This document shows, one piece after another, positions 1 through 43,400 of a stretch of DNA of 64,000 bases. How positions within the stretch are numbered: the stretch's first letter is position 1; each line of letters starts with the position of its first letter. The position numbers and the translations under genes were made by a program. The DNA is taken from positions 47,430,001-47,494,000 of the forward strand of contig CM060731.1 of NCBI GenBank assembly GCA_030704615.1, given 5' to 3'. A model generated the notes under the pieces. That model did not search any database. It saw only the letters and a list, made by a program, of their open reading frames with translations, and was not told the origin of the DNA. This DNA comes from Takakia lepidozioides. Taxonomy: Eukaryota; Plantae; Bryophyta.

Positions 1-842
1 CGTGGTAGGCATTCTACCCTTCTCTGTCTCTCTCGAATCTCTTGAAACCCTCACCACCTTCTTCCCTCCCCATTAACCCCTCACTGACTGCCTGCAGAAT
101 CTCTCTCTAAATCACTAACTGCGAAACCTACATCAACTCCATTTTTCCTGTTCTCAATTCCAAGCTCCTGAAAATTCAACGCCACTATACACGCAAACAC
201 CTACTTGTTGCCATCCATGAAAACCGCATCCGACAGCACTATCACTCATCCGTATGATCGGCATCCCAGCGACAGTGAGCTGCAGCGTACTCCCACTCTT
301 CCTCCGACATGGCCTTCTATCTCTCTCTCTCTCTCTCTCTCTTCTTCCCTCATTTCTCGCCATAGCTGCATCTTTGCAAGGAAAGTATCTCCACGTGGCA
401 GTACACGGTTCGTCAATTTGTGAATTCACAGCTATTTATACTATCTAATTCAATCTGTTCCTTTGGGACGGATTCCGTTCATCATCACTCAATTTACATC
501 CGCCGTTCGACCTCTTCAGTCCAGGGACATGTTTTGCTCGTGGGGTTCCTCCCAACAACCAATGGACCCAGATATGCATAAATCAACCAATTCCATTTCT
601 CCATTTCTCACCTATTCTCATGGATATTGAGCTGACAAGCAAACAAGGCTTCCATACATACAAGATGAGGGAAGTTTTTTGCCTTCATCAGCATTCAAGT
701 CAGCTCCATCTAGCAGGGTCAGTTCTTCTTGCCTAATATTCAGGCACTTGAAAATCTCCTCTACACCTTTCCACCAGTGCTTAACAGGGCGGTCTTGCTT
801 GCAAGAAATAGAGTCCAGCATTCTACGATATCTGGTTTTAGG

Positions 843-3800
843 TGTTAGAAGTCAGCTCAGATTTAGTTAGCTAGGGTTCTGTTAGGGTTTTTTGACGGCT
901 AGGGATAGTTCTACCAGAAGGTTCCAGCCACCAGAAGTTTCTAGAGAACTCATGTAGGATTTAAGGGAAAAGCTGAGGCAATGCCCAACACTTCTTCTAG
1001 CATTTTGGATGTGCTATCCTAGTAGATTGCAGAAAGAGGAGGAGGAGAAGTCCAGCATCTACTTTTGTAAGTTCTTTTTTTTGCAGTAAGGAGCATTCTT
1101 GTTAGGACTGACACTTCTTGTTAGTACTAACTCTTTGGTTGGTTTAGGCTGTCAGTTTTTGTACTGCTGCTTGTGCTAGAAGCTATCTGTCAATATCTCT
1201 AGGAGGTAGAGGACAGGTCTAGTTTCCAACCTGGCTCTGACACCAAGGTCTAGTTTCCAACAGGTTATGGGCCCACAAGACATTACAACTACTTGGACAG
1301 TTGAGCCACTGGATGGTAACAACTATAAGAGTTGGATCTACACGATGCAGCTCCTGCTCTCTTCAAAGAGCCTATGGTCAATAGTGGCTAAAAAGCCTTC
1401 AGAGGATAACCTGAAGGAGGAGAGATGGATCCAAAAGAATGAGCTTGCAATGGCAGCTCTAGTCACAAACATGAGATCAAAGCTGGTAGTTTTGGTAAGG
1501 AATCTTACAACTGCTCATGAGGTCTGGCAGACCTTAAGTGAGGTGTATGAGGCAGATGCAATGGGGAAAACATATGTCATATGGAAACAGCTCATGGACT
1601 TGAGAATGAGAGAAGGTGAGAGTGTAGCCATTTACATTGCCACTGTTAAACCCATGTGTATGGAGATAGTTGATGCGGGAGAACCCATGACTGAATCACT
1701 TCAGATCATGACCTTGTTTGGCACCTTGCCAAAGAGTTATGACATGGTGGAAACCGCATTGGCTACTCATGGTAAGAATCGACTGAGTTGGAAGTATGTC
1801 ACTTCACAACTCATCATGGAAGAAAGCAAGCTGACTAGGGATAGCTCAAGTATGGACAATGCCCTGACGGCTACTTCCATCAAGAAAGATGGAGCATGTT
1901 TCCGATGCGGCAAATTTGGGCATTTCCAGTAGGACTGCAAGGTGAAGATTGACAAGTCCAAGAAGGACAAGTGGAGACCAAGGAAAGGGAAGTCTGTACA
2001 TGTCGCTGACATGGGCAACGACAGTGAAGTTCACATGTTTATGGCAGATGCAGCTTACAGTCGTGATGAAGACTACCTGCTGACTACTGAAGGAGAACAC
2101 TGTGGAGATGAGTGGTATTTGGACTCTGGAGCTACTAACCACATGTGTGGGAGGAAGGAGTTGTTTCACAACTTGAAACCCATTCAGCCTAGAAGCGTAA
2201 AGATGGGCAACAAGACGTTTTCTGTAAGTACGATGATGGGAGAAATCCCTGTCAACTTTATCAAAAAAAAAAGTAAGGTTACCCGTTGTACCCTTCAGAA
2301 AGTCCTATATGTGCCAGACTTGGCAAAGAATCTGATCTCTGTTAGTACCTTGGATGAGCTTGGGTATGATGTCATTTTCAGAAACAATGCTTGCAGCATC
2401 CAGAAGGGCAACGAAGAACTCTGTTATGGAGTGAAGGAGCAAAGACTCTACAAGCTTTTGAGTACATCTGGAACTCAGGAGGAGGCCAATGTTGGGGACA
2501 CAATGGACACTGCACCATTGTGGCATAGAAGGTTGGGTCACTTGGGAACACAAGGAATCAAGGATCTTCAAAAGTTGGCGTTGGGACTGAATGTGGACTG
2601 GTCACATGAGCTACAGTTCTGTGAAGGATGTGCTAAAGGGAAACAACACAAGTCATCAATGCCCAAGGAATCTACCATAAGAGCAAAGGAGAGGCTGGAG
2701 TTGATACACACAGATGTATGTGGCCCCATGAAGACAACATCGCTGGGAGGATCTAGGTACTTTGTCACCTTCACTGATGACATGAGTAGAAAAACTTTCT
2801 TATATCCCTTGAGAGAGAAAGGTCAAGTGTTGCAGGTCTTTAAGCAATTTGTGCATGAAGTAGAAAACCAGCTGGACCTCAAAGTCAAGGTTCTGAGGAG
2901 CGATGGTGGGGGGAGAATTCCTAAATCAGGAATTCAAAAACTATCTTGCTGAGAAAGGCATAAAGAGCCAAGTAACAGCGAGGGGCAGTCCAGCCCAGAA
3001 TGGAGTGGCAGAGAGATTAAACAGAACACTGGTTGAGAAGGCTAGATGTATGCTACAGACCTCAGGCCTTGGACCAGAGTTTTGGGGAGAGGCAATCAGC
3101 ACTGCCACCTATCTGAAAAATTTGAGTCCCACGCGAGCTTTGAAAGACATGACTCCAGAAGAGGCGTGGAGTGGGAAGAAGCCAAACCTGAAGCATCTAA
3201 GAGTTTTTGGTTGTGCTGCTTATGCATTGATACCTGACGAGCAAAGGAGCAAGTTGGATGCCAAGTCAGAAAGATGTATCTTCATTGGGTATGATCTGGG
3301 ATGCAAGGGGTACAAGGTCTACAATCCTAGAACCAAGAGGTCAATCAGGAGTAGAGATGTCTTGTTTGATGAGGATAGTTTTGGGAAGGAGACAAAGCCC
3401 AAGGACCTGTCCGTTCCTGTGATAATCCCTGATGTGGGAGAAAAAAAAGGGAACAACAAGTAGTAAAGGTTTACACTCGAAGGGAGAAGGTGGCGAAGAA
3501 ACCAGAAGAGGATGAAGATTCTGAAGATCGGGATCCTATTGACAAGGATGGGGGGCCTAGAAGGTCAGGAAGGATCAGCAAACCCCCAGAAAGGTTTGGA
3601 GCTAATGTGGCAGAAGGACTGACTGGTCTGACTATGGATGACATAGGGCAGATGGAAAGTTGTTTCCATGCCCTTGATGATGCAGAGGAGCCAGCCACCC
3701 TCAATGACGCTTTGGCAAGGGATGATGCCAATGAGTGGGAGGGAGCTGTACTAGAGGAGATGAAATCTCTGAAAAAAAACCAGACTTGGGAGCTGGTAAC

Positions 3801-5613
3801 ACTACCTGGTGGTAGAAAGGCGGTAGATTGCAAGTGGGTTTTCAAAGTGAAAAGAGGACCCAACAATGAGATAGTGAAGTACAAGGCCAGACTTGTGGCC
3901 AGAGGCTTCACACAGACTGCAGGGCTTGACTACAATGAAACTTTTGCCCCAGTGGCAAAGTTCACCTCCATCCGATGTTTGCTGGCATTGGCAGCGAAGC
4001 ATGACTGGGAGATAGAATACATGGATGTGAAGACTGCATTCTTGAATGGGGATCTTCAGGAGGAGATCTACATGAAACAACCAGAAGGTTTCTAAGAAGG
4101 TGATAAGGTGTGTCGGCTCAAGAAATCGTTATATGGACTCAAACAGGCATCGAGGACATGGTATGAGAAGATCAATAGCTACTTGACAGGCCAAGGTTTT
4201 GTAAGGAGTACAGCTGATCAGAGCATTTACTACATGACATCAGGTGTCATGATAATAGCACTCTATGTGGATGATCTGCTACTGATCAGCGACAACAAGG
4301 ATACCATGCGCAGGCAGAAGCATGATTTGAGTGAAACCTTTGAGATGGTTGATCTTGGAGCCGTGAACTACCTACTTGGAATTCAGATTCTGAGGGACAG
4401 GAAGGCGAGAACTATAAAGTTGAGCCAAGAGAGGTATGTCAGGAATGTTGTTGTGAAGTTTGGTATGCAGAACTGCAAACCAGCACCAACACCATTGGAA
4501 ACCGGCTGCAAGCTGAGTAAGGAAATGGAGCCAAAATCTCCAAGTGAGATTGAGGAAATGGCTAAGGTTCCATATCAGCAAGCCATGGGCACCAGGCCAG
4601 ACATTGCCTATGCAGTGGGAATGCTTAGTAAGTTCATGCACAACCCAGGACCTCAGCATTGGAAAGCACTCAAGAGGGTGATTAGATATTTGAAAGGGAC
4701 TGCGGATACATGTCTAACTTACAACAAGCAGGACACTGGAGCATCACTAGAAAGATGCAGTGATGCAGATTGGGCAGGAGACACAGATGAGAGGAGATCC
4801 ATATCTGCCTACTGCTTTGTAATGAGTGGAGGTGCTGTGAGTTGGAGCAGCAAAAGACAGCAGACCACTGCTCTATCCTCGACTGAGTCAGAGTATATGG
4901 CTCTGACTCATGCAGCTAAAGAAGCCATTTGGATTCGAAGGCTTCTTGGTGAACTTGGCTTCAGTCAAGAACAACCAACGAAAGTGCATGCTGATAACAG
5001 GAGCAGCATTGAGCTGAGCAAGAATCCTGTTCATCATGCCCGGACCAATCACATAGATATCAAACATCATTTCATTAGAGAAATGATTGGTTTGGAGATT
5101 GTGTTGGTTTACTGTAGGACTGAGGACATGGCAGCTGATGCACTCACAAAGGCTCTATCCAAAGAAAAGCATTCTAGATGCATGGAACTGATTGGGTTAA
5201 GCCTCAGTCCTCGCTGAGTGGGAGTGTTAGAAGTCAGCTCAGATTTAGTTAGCTAGGGTTCTGTTAGGGTTTTTTGACGGCTAGGGATAGTTCTACCAGA
5301 AGGTTCCAGCCACCAGAAGTTTCTAGAGAACTCATGTAGGATTTAAGGGAAAGGCTGAGGCAATGCCCAACACTTCTTCTAGCATTTTGGATGTGCTATC
5401 CTAGTAGATTGCAGAGAGAGGAGGAGGAGAAGTCCAGCATCTACTTTTGTAAGTTCTTTCTTTTGCAGTAAGGAGCATTCTTGTTAGGACTAACACTTCT
5501 TGTTAGTACTAACTCTTTGGTTGGTTTAGGATGTCAGTTTTTGTACTGCTGCTTGTGCTAGAAGCTATCTGTCAATATCTCTAGGAGGTAGAGGACAGGT
5601 CTAGTTTCCAACA
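843..5613 (+). mobile_element. Full-length Ty1/copia LTR retrotransposon, coding region decayed
   Basis: LTRs at 843-~1230 and 5225-5613 (TGTTAG...CCAACA, about 389 bp, about 5 mismatches by eye). 5-bp TSD TTAGG at 838-842 and 5614-5618. PBS at 1263-1276 and short purine-rich tract at ~5215-5224. Domain order gag-PR-IN-RT-RH. Confidence 0.97.
1267..5217 (+). pseudogene. copia gag-pol polyprotein, disrupted
   Basis: Zinc knuckle CFRCGKFGHF*DC, protease WYLDSGATNHM, GAG-pre-integrase WHRRLGH, integrase HTDVCGP/RSDGGGEF/QNGVAERLNR, RT YVDDLL, RNase H DADWAG/EYMAL/ADALTK. In-frame stops at 1930 and 4093, frameshifts at ~2905 and ~3445, short deletion in YQQAMG-TRPDI. Confidence 0.95.
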
Positions 5614-5998
5614 TTAGGTATGTGATTCAACTGACCCCACCATCTGACTTTAAACTCATCCTGTCAAGAGAAAAGGGCAGTACGCCAAACTCACCCCGAA
5701 CAGCCGCAGCCTCGTTAGTTGTTCTAGAGCATGCTGACATGCTCAATATTAGAGATCCCCAACCTGAATGGATTCTAGAGAGTTAATATGGTTGGAGGTG
5801 TCGACCCACATGGCAGATGCATACTCCAAGGCAGGTCTAATAATGTTGGAAAGCATGGTCCTTTTGCCGTCAGTATTGATCCCTCTGCGGGGGAATATTT
5901 GAGTGAGACCCAAAGCTTTGCATTTAGCTGTTTGAAGCTATATACGCATCCAAGTTACAATTGAGGAAAAGTCAACGTGTATGTAGGAGAGAGAGCTA

Positions 5999-11667: not shown

Positions 11668-11751
11668 TCGGCCAAAGGAATGATGATATGCTTGACAGAT
11701 TTTAATCTGATGACTAATATTACAGACTACAATTATCTGAACTTTGGCCGA
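11668..11751 (+). ncRNA. C/D box snoRNA guiding methylation near the 25S rRNA 5' end (possibly snoR36/Um144-like), copy 1
   Basis: 10-bp terminal stem TCGGCCAAAG/CTTTGGCCGA, C box ATGATGA, D box CTGA. Guide CAGACTACAATT is antisense to plant 25S AATTGTAGTCTG. Confidence 0.8.
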
Positions 11752-34474: not shown

Positions 34475-37400
34475 TTAAACAGGATGTGTAATTAAGTGTG
34501 ACACCTTGCAATCTTCTGGAAGTTCAGCTGAAGTAGTCCTCGTTATGCGGTGCTGTTGCAAGCTGATAAGCCGCGAATATGCACCGTTGGGTCTCACAAC
34601 AAGCTCTTGATGCATGCCTTGTTCGATGATGGCACCGTCCTGGATCACGGCTATGCTATTGGCATTGCGAATAGTTGAGAGCCTGTGTGCAACTATCACT
34701 GATGTGCGCCCCTTCAATCATAAGAAGATGTGCAATTCAGGCCCAAAATCCCCAAAAACATGTTTGCAAGTGCAAATATATCCTAGCTGGATGTCAGGCT
34801 AGTCTCTTTTTTTCTTTCTTTCTTCTGCTTTGCAAACTCATCCAAAAGATTTTCTTTGAAAGACGCATTTCAGAGGCATGACCATACAATTGATACAATC
34901 CAACTTCAGCATGCAAGTCAAGCACAGGGATATATAGGCACACATAGTTTGACCCCTAGCCGAACACCATACCTTCATTAGCCTGTCCAAGGCTTCTTGC
35001 ACAATCTTTTCCGACTCAGCATCAAGCGCACTGGTGGCCTCATCCAGCAGCAATATTGCTGGATTCTTCAAGACTGCTCGTGCAATAGCCACCCGCTGTT
35101 TCTGGCCACCAGAGAGCTGAAGCCCTCGTTCCCCAACTTGAGTTTTGTACCCATCTGGCAGGGCAGAGATATAATTGTGTGCATTAGCAGCTTTGGCTGC
35201 CTCAATAATCTCAGCCTCAGATGCCCCTTCCCTCCCATAGAGAATGTTGTCGTAAATGGTGGTGGCAAACAAGGCAGGTTCCTGCTGCACAAGCCCAATG
35301 TGTAGCCGAAGACTTTTCAGATTCAATTTCCTCACGTCCGTCCCATCGATCAGGACTTGGCCAGAGATGGGGTCATAAAACCTCTCGATCAGTGAAATCA
35401 CTGAGCTCTTTCCTGACCCGCTTGAGCCTACAAGAGCCAGGCTTTTTCCAGCACGCACCTTCAGATTCAAGTCCTTGAAAATGGGAAGCTTTGGCCGCGA
35501 TGCGTAGGTGAACATAACATGCTTCAGCTCAATATCTCCCCTCACAGACTGTAAATTCTCGCCAAGAAAGTCATCGCTATCTATCTCTGTATGCCGGTCA
35601 AGCACCTCAAACACTCCAGCCAGGGCCTGACCTCCTTTCACACAGTCTGGAGCACCAGAAAGCGCCTCGGCAATAGCAATGGCAGCAACAGATAGAAGTA
35701 GGAACACTTGGATGACGTTTGAAAATTTTGTAAGATTATCTTTCACCAACTGGGCTCCATACCATAGAGCCAATGCGTAGGACCCATACATAGCTAGCTG
35801 TGAGAGCCCGTACCCAAGACCTGCCACCTGGTAAAGCAAATTCTTCCTTAGAGGCTTCTGCTGGTAATAGAAAAGAAATTGCATAAAGGATTGCCCCAGC
35901 GCTAGCAATCCTCATGAATGTCCTTCATTCCCTGGTATCTACTACATCATCTGAGGTAAGCCTGCCCATGAGAGAAAGAGAGAGGGCTATTTCAACAAAG
36001 TGAGGGAAATAACAAGGTTGAAAGAGTCATGAATTAATACCTGGCCTCGCCAAAAGCTCCTGTTCATGGAGCCCTCCATCTCGTGGACAAAGAGGCGTAG
36101 GACTTTCTTCTCAGCATTGAAGGCTGCCACTGTCCGGATATTACTTACCGCGTCCCCAGCAACCATGTTTGCTCTGGCCTGAGCCTTGGCTATGTCTCCT
36201 GCAAACCCCTTCAAAAATATTTGCTGCACAGCAGGCCCGGCATGACAAAACAATCTTTGAGTGTCGAGATCAAACTGCCAAAAATTTAAAGAAGGCCAAA
36301 AAAAATCTCAGGAAGGGGAGTAAGAGGAGAGAAAATGAAGAGACGAGAAATGAAATGAAATGAAATGGTACTTTATAACGTCCGCGGAAAGCTCATAGAG
36401 CTTATGGGACAAAATGGAAACATGAGAGAGGAACAAGTCCAGAAACCACAATTAATGTTCTAGCGAATGTCGAAGGGTGAAGGCCTCGTGCAGGTAGGGG
36501 GCCAAGCATTTTTGATCCTCATAGTGGAAGACATCAGTGAGAGTTTGGGTTCCACTGAATAAACAGTGGAATCTCCCACGGATCTCGTAGTATAGAGGGC
36601 AGTAGAAGAAGAAGTGTTCTTCAGTTTCGATTTCCTGGCTGCGCCCTATGCAAGCTGGACATAGGCGGTCCTCCCGTTGCAGGTTTTCCCATCTGCCAGT
36701 CTCTATCCGTAGGTTGTGGGAACCCACCCTGAACCGCCCCAATGCCCTCAGGAGGGAAGGAGATAAGGATGCTGAAAGGTAATTTGGTCTCAAGATTCTA
36801 TTGTCGCGGAGCACCAAGAATGTCTCTCGATAGAAGTGGAGCTTTGTTGGGTAGCTTCCAAGTTCTCTGGACATGTAATTCCATAAGCTCTCTCCTAACG
36901 AGTCTGTTGCGGTCATGTCTGGACGTGATGTCCACCTCATCTGGATTCATTGGTAATAGGAAAGCAGTAGAAAGTCCGTTACGTTGAAATAAAACTGTCC
37001 ACTCGAGCATACCAGGAGTTCCTGAAACCTGCAGCTTTGAGCCTCATAGATGTTCGAGAAAGAAAGTTCAACTTCATAACCTGGGGGGGGGACCAAGTAG
37101 AACAATGTTCATGAGAAGACGTATATTACATTGATAATACATTTTTGGGCCACAAAAGGCACCTGGTAGACTTTACAAGAGGACACACAAGATGTATCAG
37201 AAAGCCTCTATCCCAGTCAGAGACTTTCTTCATTCAGGCAAGCTGCCCAGAGTCTCTGGTCTCCATAGCTAATTACCTCTGCCAAGGATGAGAAATGAAA
37301 TGAAATGGTGCTTTATATAATGTCCGCGAAAAGCTCATAGAGCTTATGGGACAAAATGGAAAGAAAAACATGAGAGAAAACAGGAAATCAGAGTCAGAGA

Positions 37401-40400
37401 AAAGAACTATTGTTCGAGTGATTGTCTAAGGGTGAATGACTCGTGCAGGTAGGCTGCCATTTCTGATCTTCATAGTGGAAGACTTCAGTGAGAGATTGGG
37501 TTCCACGGAACAGACAATGGAATCTCCCACGGATCTCATAGTATAGAGGGCAATAGAAGAAGAAGTGTTCTTCAGTTCCAATTTCCTGGTTGCGCCCTGT
37601 GCAAGCTGGACAGAGGCGGTCCTCCCGCTGCAGGTTTTCCCATCTGCCAGTCTCTATCTGTAGGTTGTGGGAGCCCACCCTGAACCGCCCCAAAGCCCTC
37701 AGGAGATAAGGAGATAAAGAGGCCGAAAGGTAATTGGGCCGCAAGATTCTATCATCTCGGAGAACCAAGAATATTTCTCGATAGAAATGGAGCTTTGTCG
37801 TGAGGTTGGGTAACTTCCAAGTTCTCCTGACATGTAGCTCCATGAGCTCCTTTCTAATTAGCTGGTTGCGGTCATGCTTGGATGTGATGTCCACCTCTTC
37901 TGGGTTCACTGGCAATAGTGAAGCAATAGAGAGTCAGATGAGAGAAAGGAGACATTTGAAGGAAGAGAAATGAAATGAAATGAAATGAAATGAAATGGTA
38001 CTTTATAACGTCCACGGAAAGCTCATAGAGAGAAATTCACCTCAGCAAGAGACGCACAGACGAGCAGCGGGGAACAGGCCAAGATAACAGAAGCTATACG
38101 CCACTCTACTGCAAAGGATATTCCAATCGATCCAATCAATACTACAGAATTTTGGACCAGCAAAGATAGGCGGTCCCCAATTGCACTCCTGACCGTCGTT
38201 GCATTGGCTGACAGGCGGGATGCCACCTGACCGCTGTTGTTCCCCTCAACATCAAACCAACTCACCTCATTCCTCAGAATACCTGGAAGGCAGACGAACA
38301 TGTGTGTGTGTGAGAGAGAGAGAGAGCGTACCAGAAGTCTTACAAGTAGTGTAACTGCAAATGGAGCACAAACCTAGATAGACCAGATTAGGGTATAAGA
38401 ACTACTATGACAAACTATATGGAGGAGCTTGGAAGATTGAGTTATTACATCCTTAGCTACAGCACCGAAAAATGCAACAACCATTGTGCAGAACACTAGC
38501 AGTCACTAGCAGTGGTGGGAGTCAAACCTGCAAACATCAGTTCACGGATGCGCTTCACCAGATTCTCCCCCATGACGCCAAAGAAATAGTGTTGGGCAGT
38601 GTTGCCAAGTAGACCCATGACCCCAAACACTAGAAGGATAATAGCATATGTGCTGATCTCTTTCTTCATTTTACCATGGTCTGGAAGGTGGTAAGCTGGC
38701 AACACGAGGCCTACCACTAGTCCGAATCCTGGGTGCAGGCAACCTGTGATAATGGATGCAATTGCACCAATGAGCGCAAGAGGCCACTCAGCCTGGTTCA
38801 GCTTCAACAAACGTCGTACAGATCCAGCAGGCACAGGGTGTGCTACATCTTTATCTTTTGTCAAGGTCTCTGAGGCATCTGATGCGATACTGAATTGACT
38901 CCTGCCTGGATTTAAAGGGCTTGAGAGCCTGTGGAGCACGACAAACCATGAAAGGGTGATGGATGCCTGGTCTGTAATGAACACTTACCATATTCAAAGA
39001 GCAGAAGGGGGCAGAAGAGGGATTATTCTGGCTACAGTGTGCCTACCTTTGCAACGTGGCTTTACAACAGTGCCTTCCTGTCACATCCTCAAAGTTCCCA
39101 TCAACTCTGACATGAACATTACCAGAGTACCTAGATATCATTAGCAAAAACATCCCAGTATCTTGCCATGCAGACTGGGCAGATCATGATTCAACATATA
39201 GATCTGAGGTGCTATGCATGTAGGCACCAAACAAGGCCCTCACAATTGATCAGCAAGAACATTGCGTTCAACTAAACACTCGACAATTACGTTGGTCCCT
39301 CAACTTCTCACTGAAACTAGAGGTAATTTGGTTTCAACTTTCCACCCACCCACTCACCCATCCGGACTAGAGGAAAGCTGAAGGTAAGAATTAGACTCTG
39401 ACGTATTACGGGGCCGTTTCAAGGGGGATGATATCATAGATTTTTTTGTGATCTTGTGTGGATCAGTCAAATCCTGTCTTTGGGATGACAGCAGTAACCT
39501 CTCTGTGCCGGCCAACCCAACGGTCTGCTGCACTAAGCTTTTGAAGTCCTATGGATGGCATGAACCGTAACTTGATATTATGATGCGCAATACTGAAAGT
39601 TCAGTACATTGTCTAAAATGAAAGCTGCACTTGGCTAAAAAAGAGAGTTTGGGTTCCTTTAGGCTCCATGTTTGTCTTCCATGAGGATCTTAGGCCTGTG
39701 TTCATATTCCCTCTGTCGTTACCATGTCGAGTAGGGGGTTGGTGTACTGTGGTGGCTTCCGTGAACGAACCCACCGAACCTATCAACCGAACCTAATACC
39801 AAACCTAAGCCCCACCAATATGAGTCGCTGGTTGCTTCATTTCATGGTGAAGGTGAAGAAGAGAGAGTGGAAGAGAGGAAATGTACTCATAAGACGTTGT
39901 TTGCCGTAGCCTTGTGGCAATTGACCCCGTTCCCAGTTTGAGCGGAACACAAACGGACAGAAACTAACTTTGTCAGGGGCTGATGGCGGTAGTATGACTT
40001 AACTTGGAACAGACAATTGATCCAAGCTTTTCAGATATCCTCTAGAAATCGTCACACAATCATCAATCTGCTGTGTGTGATTTGCCCAATAACTAGGCCC
40101 CAAAATGGCCTGGGCTTTTGGCTCCGCCTCGAGATGTGGAAGAGAGAGAGAGAGAGACCCACAAAAAGAGTACAAGCAGAAAAAAGCTGTATCCCACCTC
40201 ATTAATGACGCGCTGGCAAGCGTGGGTTCCTTCCCTTGTGACATAGCCATTTCTTGCAGCCTCACTAGGGCTGAATATGCACCTCTCTGCCCCTTGGCCA
40301 AGAGCTGCTCATGGTTCCCTATCTCCACAATTACACCATCCTGGACAACAGCAATCGTATCAGCCTTCCTTATGGTAGAGAGCCTGTGGGCCACAATGAC

Positions 40401-43400
40401 AGTCGTTCGCCCAACCATTGTACGATCCAGAGCTTCCTGTACAATCTGTTCTGAGCTGGCATCAAGTGCGCTGGTGGCTTCGTCAAGGAGAAGTATTGTC
40501 GGGTTCTTAAGAATTGCACGAGCAAGGGCTATCCGCTGTTTCTGGCCACCCGACATTTGAACACCGTGCTCACCTACCTGCCACATGGTCAGATGTCACT
40601 GTGACTTGATTGACATGGTCAGATTTCCCCACAAACTGGTAGTGTCCAGGGGTTGTGTAAAAGAGCTTGTTCTCTGCCATACTGGAGTTACGAGCTAGCA
40701 ACTGGGATAGAGCTTTCTTACTACGCCCACCTGCTCTGTAAAGTCTCCCAGTGGCAGGTGTTCAACTGTGCATGCAAGGTGTAAGGAGGAGGAAGGAAGG
40801 ACCCGGAGAGGGTTGCTTGTGCAGAAGCTAAAATTTCCTTCTTCACTTATGGAAGTCAGGTGAGGCAAACTCGCCCAGTGGGCTCTTGCCCTTGCTAATG
40901 TCCTCATACCAATAACTCAAGTCCTGAGCTGAATGCCTCTGCCCTTCATAGATAATTCAAGGGTAATATTAGAAATATATGTGCAGCTTCCCCGCATGGA
41001 GGGCAGAGCTCTCAATCTCTTGACCTGTCCCTCTCTGTATCTGTCTCTAACTAGACACTGTTAACTCCACATGCCCTAATTTCCTCCAAAGAATGTGACA
41101 TTTTCTCAGATCTGGAAAGGAAAAATGACTTCCTTTCACGCATAAATCCACTGTTGGAGCAAGCCTGCCTCAATGGAACTGCTCACATACTCCGTCCCAC
41201 CCCTTGCCTTCCAAACAGGGCATGGCGTGTATGGCCTAGTTGTAAATGGTCTCATCCCTCCACCCTTTTTTTTCTCTCTGAGAGTATGGTATGCACTTGG
41301 ACACTGGAAAAAATTGACTTGATCGAGAATAACCAACTTTATTAATTTAGCCTCAAAATGATGTTGATTGTGACCACTGCCCCTTTAGTTGTCACCCTCC
41401 CCACCCTCACAGTTTTATCTTTACATTGGGTTGAAATTGTGGTGTTCAGCATCGGTGTCAAATCTGGCTTCTTTGGTTTTACCCATAAATCACACTTGAC
41501 CAAAAAGTCAAGCGATCAGGAATGACCTTCAGTTCAACGTGGACCTTCATATGCCAAGAAGAAAAAGTGAAAGAACCTGAGTGTTGTAGCCCCATGGAAG
41601 CGTGGTAATAAAGGCGTGGGCATTGGCTCCCTTAGAAGCCTCTTCTATCTCCTTATCAGTGCCCTGTTCTTTGCCATATAGAATGTTCTCCTTGATGCTG
41701 GTAGCGAAAAGTGCAGGCTCCTGATTGACTAGCCCAATTTGGCCACGAAGCCACTTCAGCTGCAGTGATTTTATGTTCTGACCATCCAGCAGCACCTCTC
41801 CTGACAAACCACAAAAATAACTCTCGCCTTGAGAGAGCCATTCTCATGTACATTAAAAGGCAAGACTAACTGCCCTGCTGACCAACCAGTGGTGGAGGGA
41901 AGAGAAATGTGACCAGAGGTACATACACTCTGGAGCTCTACATCCTTTTGGACATCAAGGAGTACATTGCAATGTACATCTCTATCCTCCAGAAGCCTAC
42001 CTGATTTGGGGTCATAGAATCGCTCAATAAGAGAAATGACAGTGCTCTTGCCCGAGCCGCTGCCACCCACGATGGCCAGAGTCTTGCCAGCAGGGATGCT
42101 CAGAGAGAAGTCTCTAAAAATGAGCACATTGGGCCTGGATGGATAGCTAAACTCCACATTGCAAAACTCAATATGGCCCTGCACTTCCTTTGGCTGCTTG
42201 CCTGCCTTATTACTCTTGATGTTGATGGTGGGTTCATGGTTGATAATTTCAAAGATCTTGTAAGCCGCTGCTTTTGCCTTCCCAAATGCTGCCAGGTTCG
42301 GTGATGCTTGTCCTAGTGCACTGTGCACACCCATGGATACAATCACAGCAGACCTGATGTTAACTCACATAGACAGGATTGGTTGGAATACCTAGTGGGA
42401 AGCCTTCTCTTTGCCAGCCAGGCACATGGTGGGAGAGAGAAAGGGAGGGAGACAACATACATGCCACCAATGCTGACTTGAAAGATGGTAGCGAGAGCTT
42501 TTCCACCAGTTGTCGAGCCACTGCGTATTAGCACTCCCCCATACCACAAAAGCAGCGCCCAACAACAGAAAAAAGCAACCGACACCAACCCCATGCCGAG
42601 CCCCTTGGCCAGCCCCGTCTTATACCCCAGCTTCAATGTTGACTGAAGGGCTCTCGAGTATGTTTCCAGCTCCTTCGCCTCGCCAACGAAGGAATACACT
42701 GTGCGCACCTGTGCTATTGCCTGCTCCATGGATCCACAGACACCAGTTGTTGAGTCACACGTACAATTCCTGGAGTTTTGAGTTGTTAATTCTCTCATTT
42801 CTCTCCACCAAACCCCCCCTTTCCTTCCTGCCAAGCACCGTCCCTCTCCCCTCACACCCAGTGCTTAGACAGATGCTAAAGCACAGAATAAGTAGGCAAT
42901 CCCGGCCTGCGAATTGAATTGTGCAGAGTTCAAATTGGGAATAGCAACGTAAACTGACCTGTTCTGCGATGCCACCTGCCTCAGCATATGCCTTCTGGCT
43001 CCTGGAGGTAAGACTTGTGATAACAAGGACCTGCATCCCCCCTGTAATAGCAATCACAGGGACCACTGCCAGAGTGACCAGCCCAAGATTCCAGAGTGAT
43101 GAAAAACCAATAGCCAAACCCGCCACAAATGTGGCCATGTAGTGGACGAAGTTTCCCATCTGCAGAGATTACCCACAGAGTCAAAGTGATTTTTCCATGA
43201 AATCCCACCCGCACCAAACCCACATGGGATTTCCAAAGCCAGTGACCCAGCGCCACAAGGATGCTCGACTCTTTATGCATATTACATACATAGACCATCA
43301 ACCAGAAGTTATGTCACTCAATGACATGATTTGGGATATCAGCACGGAATGAAGTGTCAACTTGCGCATCAAAATAGTCTGCAGTTTAAAATACCTTCTC

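What the first reader, a model, noticed from the sequence alone, without database searches (positions are those of the whole stretch)
1215..1262. Mature tRNA-iMet 3' end (with CCA) captured between duplicated termini of the 5' LTR
Seen: the 5' LTR ends AGGTCTAGTTTCCAAC, continues CTGGCTCTGACACCA, then repeats AGGTCTAGTTTCCAACA before the PBS. The 3' LTR has only one terminus. Known: plant tRNA-iMet ends AACCTGGCTCTGATACCA (nt 59-76). Positions 1228-1245 match this 17/18 in the sense orientation, including the non-encoded CCA, and the match stops at m1A58, a known RT block. The first three matched bases (AAC) are shared with the LTR end. Inference: the RT jumped from U5 onto the tRNA 3' end, copied up to m1A58 and jumped back using AAC microhomology. 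In an element primed by the 5' half of the same tRNA, this would be a fossil showing that the 3' half is present during reverse transcription.
Basis: partly seen in the sequence, partly recalled or inferred. Interest (0 to 1): 0.8.

Follow-up and report, generated by a model that had tools for sequence, protein, structure and literature searches.

The report
tRNA tail captured in retrotransposon LTR
One decayed copy of a moss-type copia jumping gene carries, at the inner tip of its left repeat, a DNA copy of the finished 3' end (CCA included) of initiator methionine tRNA between two copies of the repeat's last 16 letters: a real, one-off scar left when its reverse transcriptase copied a tRNA, not a new kind of element.

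Summary
The element is a Ty1/copia retrotransposon at 843-5613 with TSD TTAGG and LTRs 98.7% alike. Its PBS (1263-1276) complements the anticodon arm of tRNA-iMet. The 5' LTR is 31 nt longer than the 3' LTR. The extra piece is U5 end (1215-1230), CTGGCTCTGACACCA (1231-1245), then U5 end again (1246-1262). Positions 1228-1245 match the plant tRNA-iMet 3' end 17/18 in sense, flush with the CCA. The chance of this at one fixed place is about 8e-10.

[quoted passage not shown] However, a jump during minus-strand strong-stop synthesis would put the insert in both LTRs, and only the 5' LTR has it. The event therefore fits better in the last leg of minus-strand synthesis, around the plus-strand transfer.

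The 18-nt limit cannot separate an m1A58 stop from copying an 18-nt 3' tRF. The AAC overlap also blurs the exact end point. "The 3' half is present" is not shown.

None of 105 other half-tRNA copia LTR/PBS junctions has such an insert. No same-family copy could be retrieved, and no sequencing reads were available.

The parts
838..842 (+). Left target-site duplication TTAGG
   Evidence: Identical to 5614-5618
843..1262 (+). 5' LTR, TG...CA, 420 nt (389 nt plus the 31-nt insertion)
   Evidence: Alignment with the 3' LTR shows 5 mismatches once the 31 nt are removed
1200..1214 (+). Purine-rich tract AGGAGGTAGAGGAC ending exactly where the duplicated segment starts. It may be a cryptic plus-strand priming or RNase H boundary; this is inference only.
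   Evidence: Sequence read; no functional test
1215..1230 (+). First copy of the U5 end (AGGTCTAGTTTCCAAC). It is followed by C, not by the terminal A.
1228..1245 (+). Sense match to tRNA-iMet nt 59-76 including CCA, 17/18 (C at 1241 where the tRNA has U72). 1228-1230 (AAC) is shared with the LTR end; 1231-1245 is unambiguously tRNA-derived.
   Evidence: tRNA sequence
1246..1262 (+). Second copy of the U5 end, complete with terminal CA (AGGTCTAGTTTCCAACA)
1263..1276 (+). PBS GGTTATGGGCCCAC, complementary to the anticodon arm (about nt 27-40) of tRNA-iMet (half-tRNA type)
   Evidence: The same LTR-tip + PBS 20-mer occurs in 102 metagenome contigs. The half-tRNA-Met PBS type is described in PMC6317226 and PMC10886601.
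1267..5217 (+). Broken gag-PR-INT-RT-RH coding region. ORF pieces: 1267-1932, 1942-2952, 2903-3463, 3490-4095, 4108-5217.
   Evidence: Retrotran_gag_2, Pol_BBD, gag_pre-integrs, rve, SH3_retrovirus, RVT_2
5216..5224 (+). Polypurine tract GAGTGGGAG abutting the 3' LTR
   Evidence: Sequence read
5225..5613 (+). 3' LTR, 389 nt, with a single terminus ...AGGTCTAGTTTCCAACA
5614..5618 (+). Right target-site duplication TTAGG

Best explanation
While this particular copy was being reverse-transcribed inside its virus-like particle, the growing minus-strand DNA copied the 3' end of a mature, CCA-bearing tRNA-iMet species as if it were template.

Proposed order of events on the minus strand:
1. It copied the PBS and then the last 17 nt of U5.
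2. It ran off that template, or left it, and continued at A76 of a tRNA-iMet molecule. The tRNA was either free (end-to-end template jump) or covalently attached because its CCA-OH had primed a short plus strand.
3. It copied 15-18 nt until it met m1A58 or the 5' end of an 18-nt 3' fragment.
4. Its new 3' end ...GTT re-paired with the AAC at the end of U5 on the regular plus-strand strong-stop DNA. It then copied the whole LTR.

The result is U5 - tRNA(59/62-76, sense) - last 17 nt of U5 - PBS in the 5' LTR only. Because the 3' LTR is clean, the event belongs to the last leg of minus-strand synthesis, at or after the plus-strand transfer, and arose de novo in this copy.

Shown: the sequence layout, the tRNA identity, the CCA, the AAC overlap and the 5'-LTR-only distribution. 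Inferred: the stage, the nature of the donor (whole tRNA, 3' half or tRF), and the reason for leaving the template after 17 nt.
For: - Layout and significance.
- The CCA is added after transcription (established knowledge), so the source is a mature tRNA copied by an RT.
- The right junction is flush with A76, the natural 3' end of a template. The homology stops next to position 58. m1A58 is the RT stop that defines the 18-nt PBS copy in retroviruses (PMC8599865).
- The left junction has 3-nt microhomology, as expected for a forced strand transfer.
- The insert lies 1 nt from the U5/PBS border of an element that uses the same tRNA species. A particle-internal event explains this; a random one does not.
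- The intact 5-bp TSD and the single terminus in the 3' LTR show one element with an asymmetry between its LTRs.
- No source for the 15-mer lies elsewhere in the window.
- Template switching during LTR-retrotransposon reverse transcription is documented in plants (PMC2923131; PMC6894440).
Against: - No reads were available, so the junction is not independently confirmed.
- No other family copy could be retrieved.
- The CCA|AGGTCT junction has no microhomology, and nothing proves why synthesis left its template after exactly 17 nt.
- Some variants of the model leave a 31-nt heteroduplex that the host must resolve in favour of the insert.
- One mismatch (U72 read as C) needs a later mutation (about 0.12 substitutions expected in 18 nt from the LTR divergence), an RT error or an isodecoder.
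- None of 105 other half-tRNA copia junctions shows the same thing, so it is rare and no rule can be drawn from it.
Confidence: 0.55

Rival explanations
1. During minus-strand strong-stop synthesis on the genomic RNA, 17 nt after priming from the 5' half tRNA, RT jumped to the CCA end of the 3' half, copied to m1A58 and returned by AAC microhomology.
For: It gives the same junctions as the best explanation. It would explain the 17-nt distance if the donor is the nicked primer tRNA itself, or if 17 nt reflects the polymerase-to-RNase H spacing of such RTs (about 17-18 nt, own knowledge).
Against: An insert made in strong-stop DNA is copied into both LTRs in the standard replication scheme, yet the 3' LTR has one terminus directly followed by the TSD. 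Integrase could not have used the inner copy, because it ends AACC rather than AACA. Rescue requires either an intermolecular plus-strand transfer between two cDNAs in one particle, or a later precise deletion between the 16-nt repeats in the 3' LTR only.
Confidence: 0.15
2. A post-integration event unrelated to the element's own replication. A cDNA of a tRNA-iMet 3' fragment was inserted by a LINE-type target-primed reverse transcription (16-bp target-site duplication, tailless tRNA retropseudogene), or was captured during break repair.
For: The 16-bp flanking direct repeat has the size of a LINE target-site duplication. Microhomology at the 5' junction is typical of 5'-truncated LINE-mediated copies (own knowledge). 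A retrotranscribed tRNA-Gly with CCA next to an HIV provirus has been reported (PMC12220202).
Against: The site is 1 nt from the U5/PBS border in a 4771-bp element (about 1e-3 for a window of a few nt). The tRNA is the very species this element uses as primer, out of some 45 families. The presumed nick site GGAC|AGGT does not resemble the A/T-rich LINE target (own knowledge).
Confidence: 0.1
3. DNA-level origin. The 15-18 nt are an inverted canonical tRNA-Met PBS from another LTR element (nested fragment or copy-choice on its minus-strand DNA), or filler DNA from a tRNA-iMet gene whose 3' flank happens to read CCA.
For: On the minus strand the insert reads TGGTGTCAGAGCCAGGTT, which is a canonical copia-type PBS with one mismatch.
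Against: No foreign sequence is present beyond the 18 nt on either side; both flanks are this element's own U5 end. There is no LTR-like CA before the TGG on the minus strand. A foreign template offers no reason to stop at either boundary, whereas the tRNA has natural ends at both. For a gene origin, CCA by chance is 1/64 and the flush boundary is a further coincidence.
Confidence: 0.05
4. Assembly artefact or chance resemblance.
For: Reads could not be examined.
Against: P is about 8e-10 for the match at one fixed place, and 0 of 100 shuffles gave a hit in the whole window. Assemblers do not invent a tRNA end between exact 16-nt repeats. The rest of the element is coherent, with an intact TSD and collinear LTRs.
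Confidence: 0.03

Closest known systems
Copying of the primer tRNA's 3' 18 nt up to m1A58 during plus-strand strong-stop synthesis in retroviruses and LTR retrotransposons
   Same: An element-encoded RT copies the CCA-ended 3' part of a tRNA and stops next to position 58 (PMC8599865). The product is then used for a homology-guided strand transfer.
   Different: In that case the tRNA is the covalently attached primer, the plus strand copies it, and the product is the PBS (antisense to the tRNA). Here the copy lies in the minus strand (sense in the element), upstream of the PBS and between duplicated U5 ends. This element's PBS pairs with the other part of the tRNA.
Half-tRNA-iMet-primed Ty1/copia elements (Drosophila copia, yeast Ty5, plant Osser/Bryco/part of Gymco-II, fungal copias)
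   Same: The PBS GGTTATGGGCCC... abuts the LTR end ...CAACA and complements the anticodon arm of tRNA-iMet.
   Different: None of 105 such junctions (80 distinct LTR ends) fetched here carries a duplicated terminus or a tRNA 3'-end insert. The insert is a private feature of this copy.
Retrocopies and chimeras made by RT template switching onto small RNAs (U6-L1 type chimeric retrocopies and tailless tRNA retropseudogenes, own knowledge; retrotranscribed tRNA-Gly with CCA beside an HIV provirus, PMC12220202)
   Same: A sense cDNA of a mature small RNA with its processed 3' end, joined to retroelement sequence, with short microhomology at a junction.
   Different: Those lie at integration sites or in LINE-made copies. 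This one is internal to an LTR element, at the U5/PBS border, involves the element's own primer tRNA species, and returns to the same template.
tRNA-iMet-related small-RNA loci that target PBS sequences (miR845/miR1511; 3' CCA tRFs)
   Same: A genomic sense copy of the tRNA-iMet 3' end is complementary to the canonical PBS of many LTR elements (PMC8215267; PMC7472051).
   Different: No hairpin or unusual fold surrounds the insert (z = -0.37). Nothing suggests it is processed into a small RNA.

Membership tests
Ty1/copia LTR retrotransposon | Direct LTRs with TG...CA ends flanked by a 5-bp target-site duplication | tested here: met
   LTRs at 843-1262 and 5225-5613, TGTTAG...CCAACA, TSD TTAGG on both sides
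Ty1/copia LTR retrotransposon | Domain order gag - protease - integrase - RT - RNase H, with copia-type Pfam families | tested here: met
   Retrotran_gag_2, Pol_BBD, gag_pre-integrs, rve, SH3_retrovirus and RVT_2 in that order. The reading frame is broken in at least four places.
Half-tRNA-iMet-primed copia lineages (Bryco/Osser/Gymco-II type) | A PBS directly after the 5' LTR that complements the anticodon stem-loop of tRNA-iMet rather than its 3' end | tested here: met
   GGTTATGGGCCCAC at 1263-1276; type described in PMC6317226. Lineage placement by RT phylogeny was not done; the best RT-RH hit is 54% identical.
RT copy of a mature tRNA (processed retro-sequence) | The post-transcriptionally added CCA is present and flush with a junction | tested here: met
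   ...GACACCA|AGGTCT at 1239-1251
RT copy of a mature tRNA (processed retro-sequence) | Copy ends at a known RT block (m1A58) | tested here: inconclusive
   Homology ends at nt 59, but AAC (59-61) is shared with the LTR, and an 18-nt tRF gives the same end
RT copy of a mature tRNA (processed retro-sequence) | Matches the host's own tRNA-iMet | not testable with these tools
   No tRNA gene in the window and the host genome is not searchable here. The match is to the sequence conserved from green algae to angiosperms, with 1 mismatch at position 72.
LINE-mediated tailless tRNA retropseudogene | Flanking target-site duplication of about 7-20 bp | tested here: met
   16-nt exact direct repeat
LINE-mediated tailless tRNA retropseudogene | Insertion site independent of the host sequence's function; A/T-rich nick site | tested here: not met
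   The site is 1 nt from the U5/PBS border of an element primed by the same tRNA; the presumed nick is GGAC|AGGT
Inverted canonical PBS of a nested or recombined LTR element | Homology to a foreign element extending beyond the 18 nt (LTR end ...CA next to TGG on the minus strand) | tested here: not met
   Both flanks are this element's own U5 end
MIR845/MIR1511-like tRNA-iMet-derived miRNA gene | Stable hairpin precursor around the tRNA-like arm | tested here: not met
   Fold of 1150-1330 is no better than shuffles, z = -0.37

The most novel reading that the evidence does not exclude
The donor was not just any tRNA-iMet in the particle. It was the 3' part of the very molecule whose 5' half primed this cDNA. 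After cleavage in the anticodon arm the two halves would stay paired through the acceptor stem, placing the CCA end some 17 nt along the template from the priming site. There it could be used as template or as a stray primer. The scar would then be a natural record of the architecture of the half-tRNA priming complex, which has not been resolved for copia- or Ty5-type elements.
Probability: 0.15. Interest if true: 0.75.

Novelty: new variant of a known kind. Interest (0 to 1): 0.45.

Why it matters
Very little is known about how copia/Ty5-type elements that prime from the anticodon arm of tRNA-iMet obtain and handle their primer. This includes whether the tRNA is cut before or after packaging, and what becomes of the 3' part. 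A genomic scar showing that a CCA-ended tRNA-iMet 3' end was within reach of the RT at the U5/PBS border gives a concrete, searchable signature: U5 end - tRNA 59-76 - U5 end - PBS. Long-read cDNA or eccDNA sequencing of active elements could look for it.

On its own it is a single dead copy. It proves only that the RT copied such an RNA once, and it does not change how these elements are classified.

Tried and rejected
- Same-family copies:
  - None elsewhere in the window (blastn).
  - The gag word search gave nothing.
  - The best RT-RH hit is 54% identical.
  - The exhaustive gag search of 1.84 billion representatives gave at best 28-32% identity.
  - An exact 23-mer of LTR end + PBS is absent from viral contigs.
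  - The 102 metagenome contigs sharing the 20-mer TTTCCAACAGGTTATGGGCC are other families.
- Recurrence in other half-tRNA copias: 0 of 105 junctions have a duplicated terminus or a plant-, yeast- or vertebrate-type iMet 3'-end-like sequence within 200 nt upstream. The window served as a positive control and was detected.
- miRNA-like hairpin around the insert: rejected.
- Local source of the 15-mer: none.
- Earlier notes of the scan: nothing by sequence. By words there were only unverified leads.
- Literature: four full-text searches for tRNA capture, template switching or insertions at the PBS or U5/PBS border found no description of a sense tRNA 3' end between duplicated U5 ends. The older retrovirology and Ty1 literature is mostly not held; for example PMC1170264 was not available.
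- A cryptic polypurine tract at 1200-1214 as the reason for the 17-nt break point is only a suggestion. It resembles the real PPT in composition, not in sequence.
Full report
WHAT IS THERE

The window's first 5.6 kb hold one Ty1/copia LTR retrotransposon on the + strand (843-5613).
- The LTRs start TGTTAG and end CCAACA.
- Both sides carry the 5-bp target-site duplication TTAGG (838-842 and 5614-5618).
- The polypurine tract GAGTGGGAG abuts the 3' LTR.
- The internal region encodes gag, protease barrel, integrase, RT and RNase H in copia order. The reading frame is broken into at least five pieces.
- Directly after the 5' LTR lies GGTTATGGGCCCAC (1263-1276). This is the complement of the anticodon arm of initiator methionine tRNA, the 'half-tRNA' primer site known from Drosophila copia and yeast Ty5. 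In plants it is known from the Osser, Bryco and part of the Gymco-II lineages (PMC6317226; PMC10886601).
- A plant snoRNA (snoZ155) and earlier notes of this scan that call the genome moss-type (unverified) fit a bryophyte copia.

The 5' LTR is 420 nt and the 3' LTR 389 nt. After removal of 31 nt the two differ at 5 of 389 positions. The extra 31 nt give this layout:
- AGGTCTAGTTTCCAAC (1215-1230)
- CTGGCTCTGACACCA (1231-1245)
- AGGTCTAGTTTCCAACA (1246-1262)
- PBS

The 16-mer occurs three times in the window against 0.02 expected. The third occurrence is the single terminus of the 3' LTR, which is followed at once by the TSD.

Positions 1228-1245 read AACCTGGCTCTGACACCA. The plant tRNA-iMet 3' end, AACCTGGCTCTGATACCA, matches with one mismatch, in sense. 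It is the only such site in 64 kb on either strand, and no shuffle gave any hit. At a fixed place the chance is about 8e-10 for 17/18, or 4e-8 for the 14/15 that are not shared with the LTR.

I did not rely on memory alone for the tRNA sequence:
- CGAAACCTGGCTCTGATACCA and 18-nt CCA-ended relatives are listed among small RNAs of a green alga (PMC6678167).
- Its complement TGGTATCAGAGC is the standard plant tRNA-Met primer site (PMC7215508).
- A tRNA-Met primer ...AACAGGCTCTGATACCA is used in sunflower (PMC2805666).

The host's own tRNA-iMet genes could not be examined, because the window has no tRNA.

WHAT IT IS

The CCA is added to tRNAs after transcription (established knowledge). The insert is flush with that CCA on its right side. 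On the left the homology ends next to position 58.

Both ends of the insert are therefore natural ends of a tRNA used as template:
- the 3'-terminal A76;
- either the m1A58 block that limits tRNA copying to 18 nt in retroviruses (PMC8599865), or the 5' end of an 18-nt 3' tRNA fragment.

The tRNA-sense strand is the element's plus strand. The strand that was polymerised on the tRNA is therefore the minus strand.

Read in the direction of minus-strand synthesis, the order is:
1. PBS.
2. 17 nt of U5.
3. tRNA from A76 down to nt 59-62.
4. U5 again, from the AAC onwards.

The return uses a 3-nt overlap (GTT on AAC). The departure junction (CCA|AGGTCT) has no overlap.

The insert lies one nucleotide from the U5/PBS border of an element that uses this very tRNA species. 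That points to an event inside the particle rather than to an unrelated insertion.

AT WHICH STEP

- it forms the right end of the cDNA;
- it is copied into plus-strand strong-stop DNA, which becomes the 5' LTR.

An insert made at that stage, or one inherited from a parent's 5' LTR through the genomic RNA, would be present in both LTRs. The 3' LTR is clean. The inner terminus reads AACC, not AACA, so it could not have served integrase.

Two things follow. The insert was made for this copy, not inherited. And it was most likely made in a step that builds only the 5' LTR/PBS junction, namely the end of minus-strand synthesis around the plus-strand transfer.

Two sub-variants fit that step:
(a) The minus strand reached the 5' end of a short template 17 nt beyond the PBS. 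That template could be a residual U5 RNA piece, or a short plus strand that began right after the purine-rich tract AGGAGGTAGAGGAC (1200-1214). The minus strand then jumped end-to-end onto the CCA end of a tRNA.
(b) The tRNA's CCA-OH itself primed that short plus strand. The minus strand then simply ran on into the attached RNA, as plus strands normally do with the primer tRNA.

In both sub-variants synthesis stops at m1A58 or at the fragment's end. It then resumes on the regular plus-strand strong-stop DNA through the AAC overlap. These steps are inferred; none was observed.

WHAT IT DOES NOT SHOW

- The stop position. The AAC overlap means copying may have ended anywhere between nt 59 and 62.
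- The nature of the donor. 18-nt CCA-ended iMet fragments exist, and 3' tRFs are known partners of PBS sequences (PMC7472051). The scar therefore cannot tell a whole tRNA from a 3' half or a 3' tRF. The claim that the 3' half stays in the priming complex is a possibility (I give it about 0.15), not a finding.
- The single mismatch. U72 read as C is compatible with a later substitution (about 0.12 expected in 18 nt from the LTR divergence), an RT error opposite U, or an isodecoder.

RIVALS

- LINE-type retro-insertion of a tRNA fragment. It would explain the 16-bp flanking repeat and the 5' microhomology, but not the position or the tRNA species, and the presumed nick site is not A/T-rich.
- An inverted canonical PBS from another element. 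It is formally what the minus strand shows, but no foreign base accompanies it and nothing would stop copying at either boundary.
- Chance. Excluded by the statistics.
- Assembly artefact. Unlikely, but not excluded because no reads were available.

HOW COMMON

The 20-mer made of the LTR tip and the PBS (TTTCCAACAGGTTATGGGCC) occurs exactly in 102 metagenome contigs from many other copia families. Among 105 junctions with enough upstream sequence (80 distinct LTR ends), none has a duplicated terminus or an iMet 3'-end-like sequence upstream. The same script detects the window's case.

No member of this element's own family could be retrieved from any collection. The test 'unique or recurrent within the family' therefore remains open, although the LTR asymmetry predicts that the insert is unique.

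An unverified note of this scan reports an LTR palindrome centred on a CCA-bearing tRNA 3' end elsewhere in the same genome (s1-488633). That may be a second scar of tRNA copying.

COMPARISON WITH WHAT IS KNOWN

- The chemistry is that of plus-strand strong-stop copying of the primer tRNA, and of RT template switching generally (PMC2923131; PMC6894440).
- Retrotranscribed tRNAs with CCA next to retroelement DNA have been described (tRNA-Gly beside an HIV provirus, PMC12220202).
- What I did not find in the held literature is a sense copy of the tRNA 3' end between duplicated U5 ends, in an element primed by the other half of that tRNA.

I therefore rate it a new variant of a known kind: real, explicable, rare and of moderate interest. 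Its main value is as a signature to look for in cDNA of active half-tRNA-primed elements.

LIMITS AND CONDUCT

No reads were laid.

Noticed in passing
window 1263-1276 / 1267: The gag ORF (Retrotran_gag_2, DUF4219 from residue 15) starts at the ATG inside the PBS. The start codon is the complement of the initiator tRNA's CAU anticodon, so the primer site and the translation start overlap.
   Followed up: partly
L001-L102 (metagenome contigs): The exact 20-mer TTTCCAACA+GGTTATGGGCC (LTR tip plus half-tRNA-iMet PBS) is shared by 102 contigs with at least 80 different LTR ends. The 9-nt LTR tip is therefore conserved across many otherwise unrelated copia families, presumably as the integrase end-recognition sequence.
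   Followed up: partly
L008:2607-2747 (also L058): A 65-nt inverted repeat, 85% complementary, spans U5 and the PBS region. The PBS lies in the 3' arm of a long hairpin whose 5' arm mimics the tRNA anticodon arm in sense (GGTCCCATAACCC). It could mask the PBS or allow self-priming. L046/L047 carry a shorter sense CCATAACCCACAG in U5, but no inverted repeat was called there.
   Followed up: partly
window 1930-1932, 2903-2952, 3463-3490, 4095-4108: The element's frame is broken at four or more places, including a TAG inside the gag CCHC zinc knuckle, although its LTRs are 98.7% alike. The copy was either made from an already defective RNA in trans or decayed quickly.
   Followed up: no
window 11673-11746 (+): Plant box C/D snoRNA snoZ155, just above Rfam's gathering score (44 vs 43 bits).
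   Followed up: no
window 34986-35140 / 40426-40580 and 36507-37935: A diverged direct repeat pair 5.4 kb apart (72%) may be the LTRs of an older element. Inside it lies a tandem duplication of about 950 bp (90% and 81% identical blocks).
   Followed up: no
window 318-342: (CT)n microsatellite in the sequence upstream of the element.
   Followed up: no
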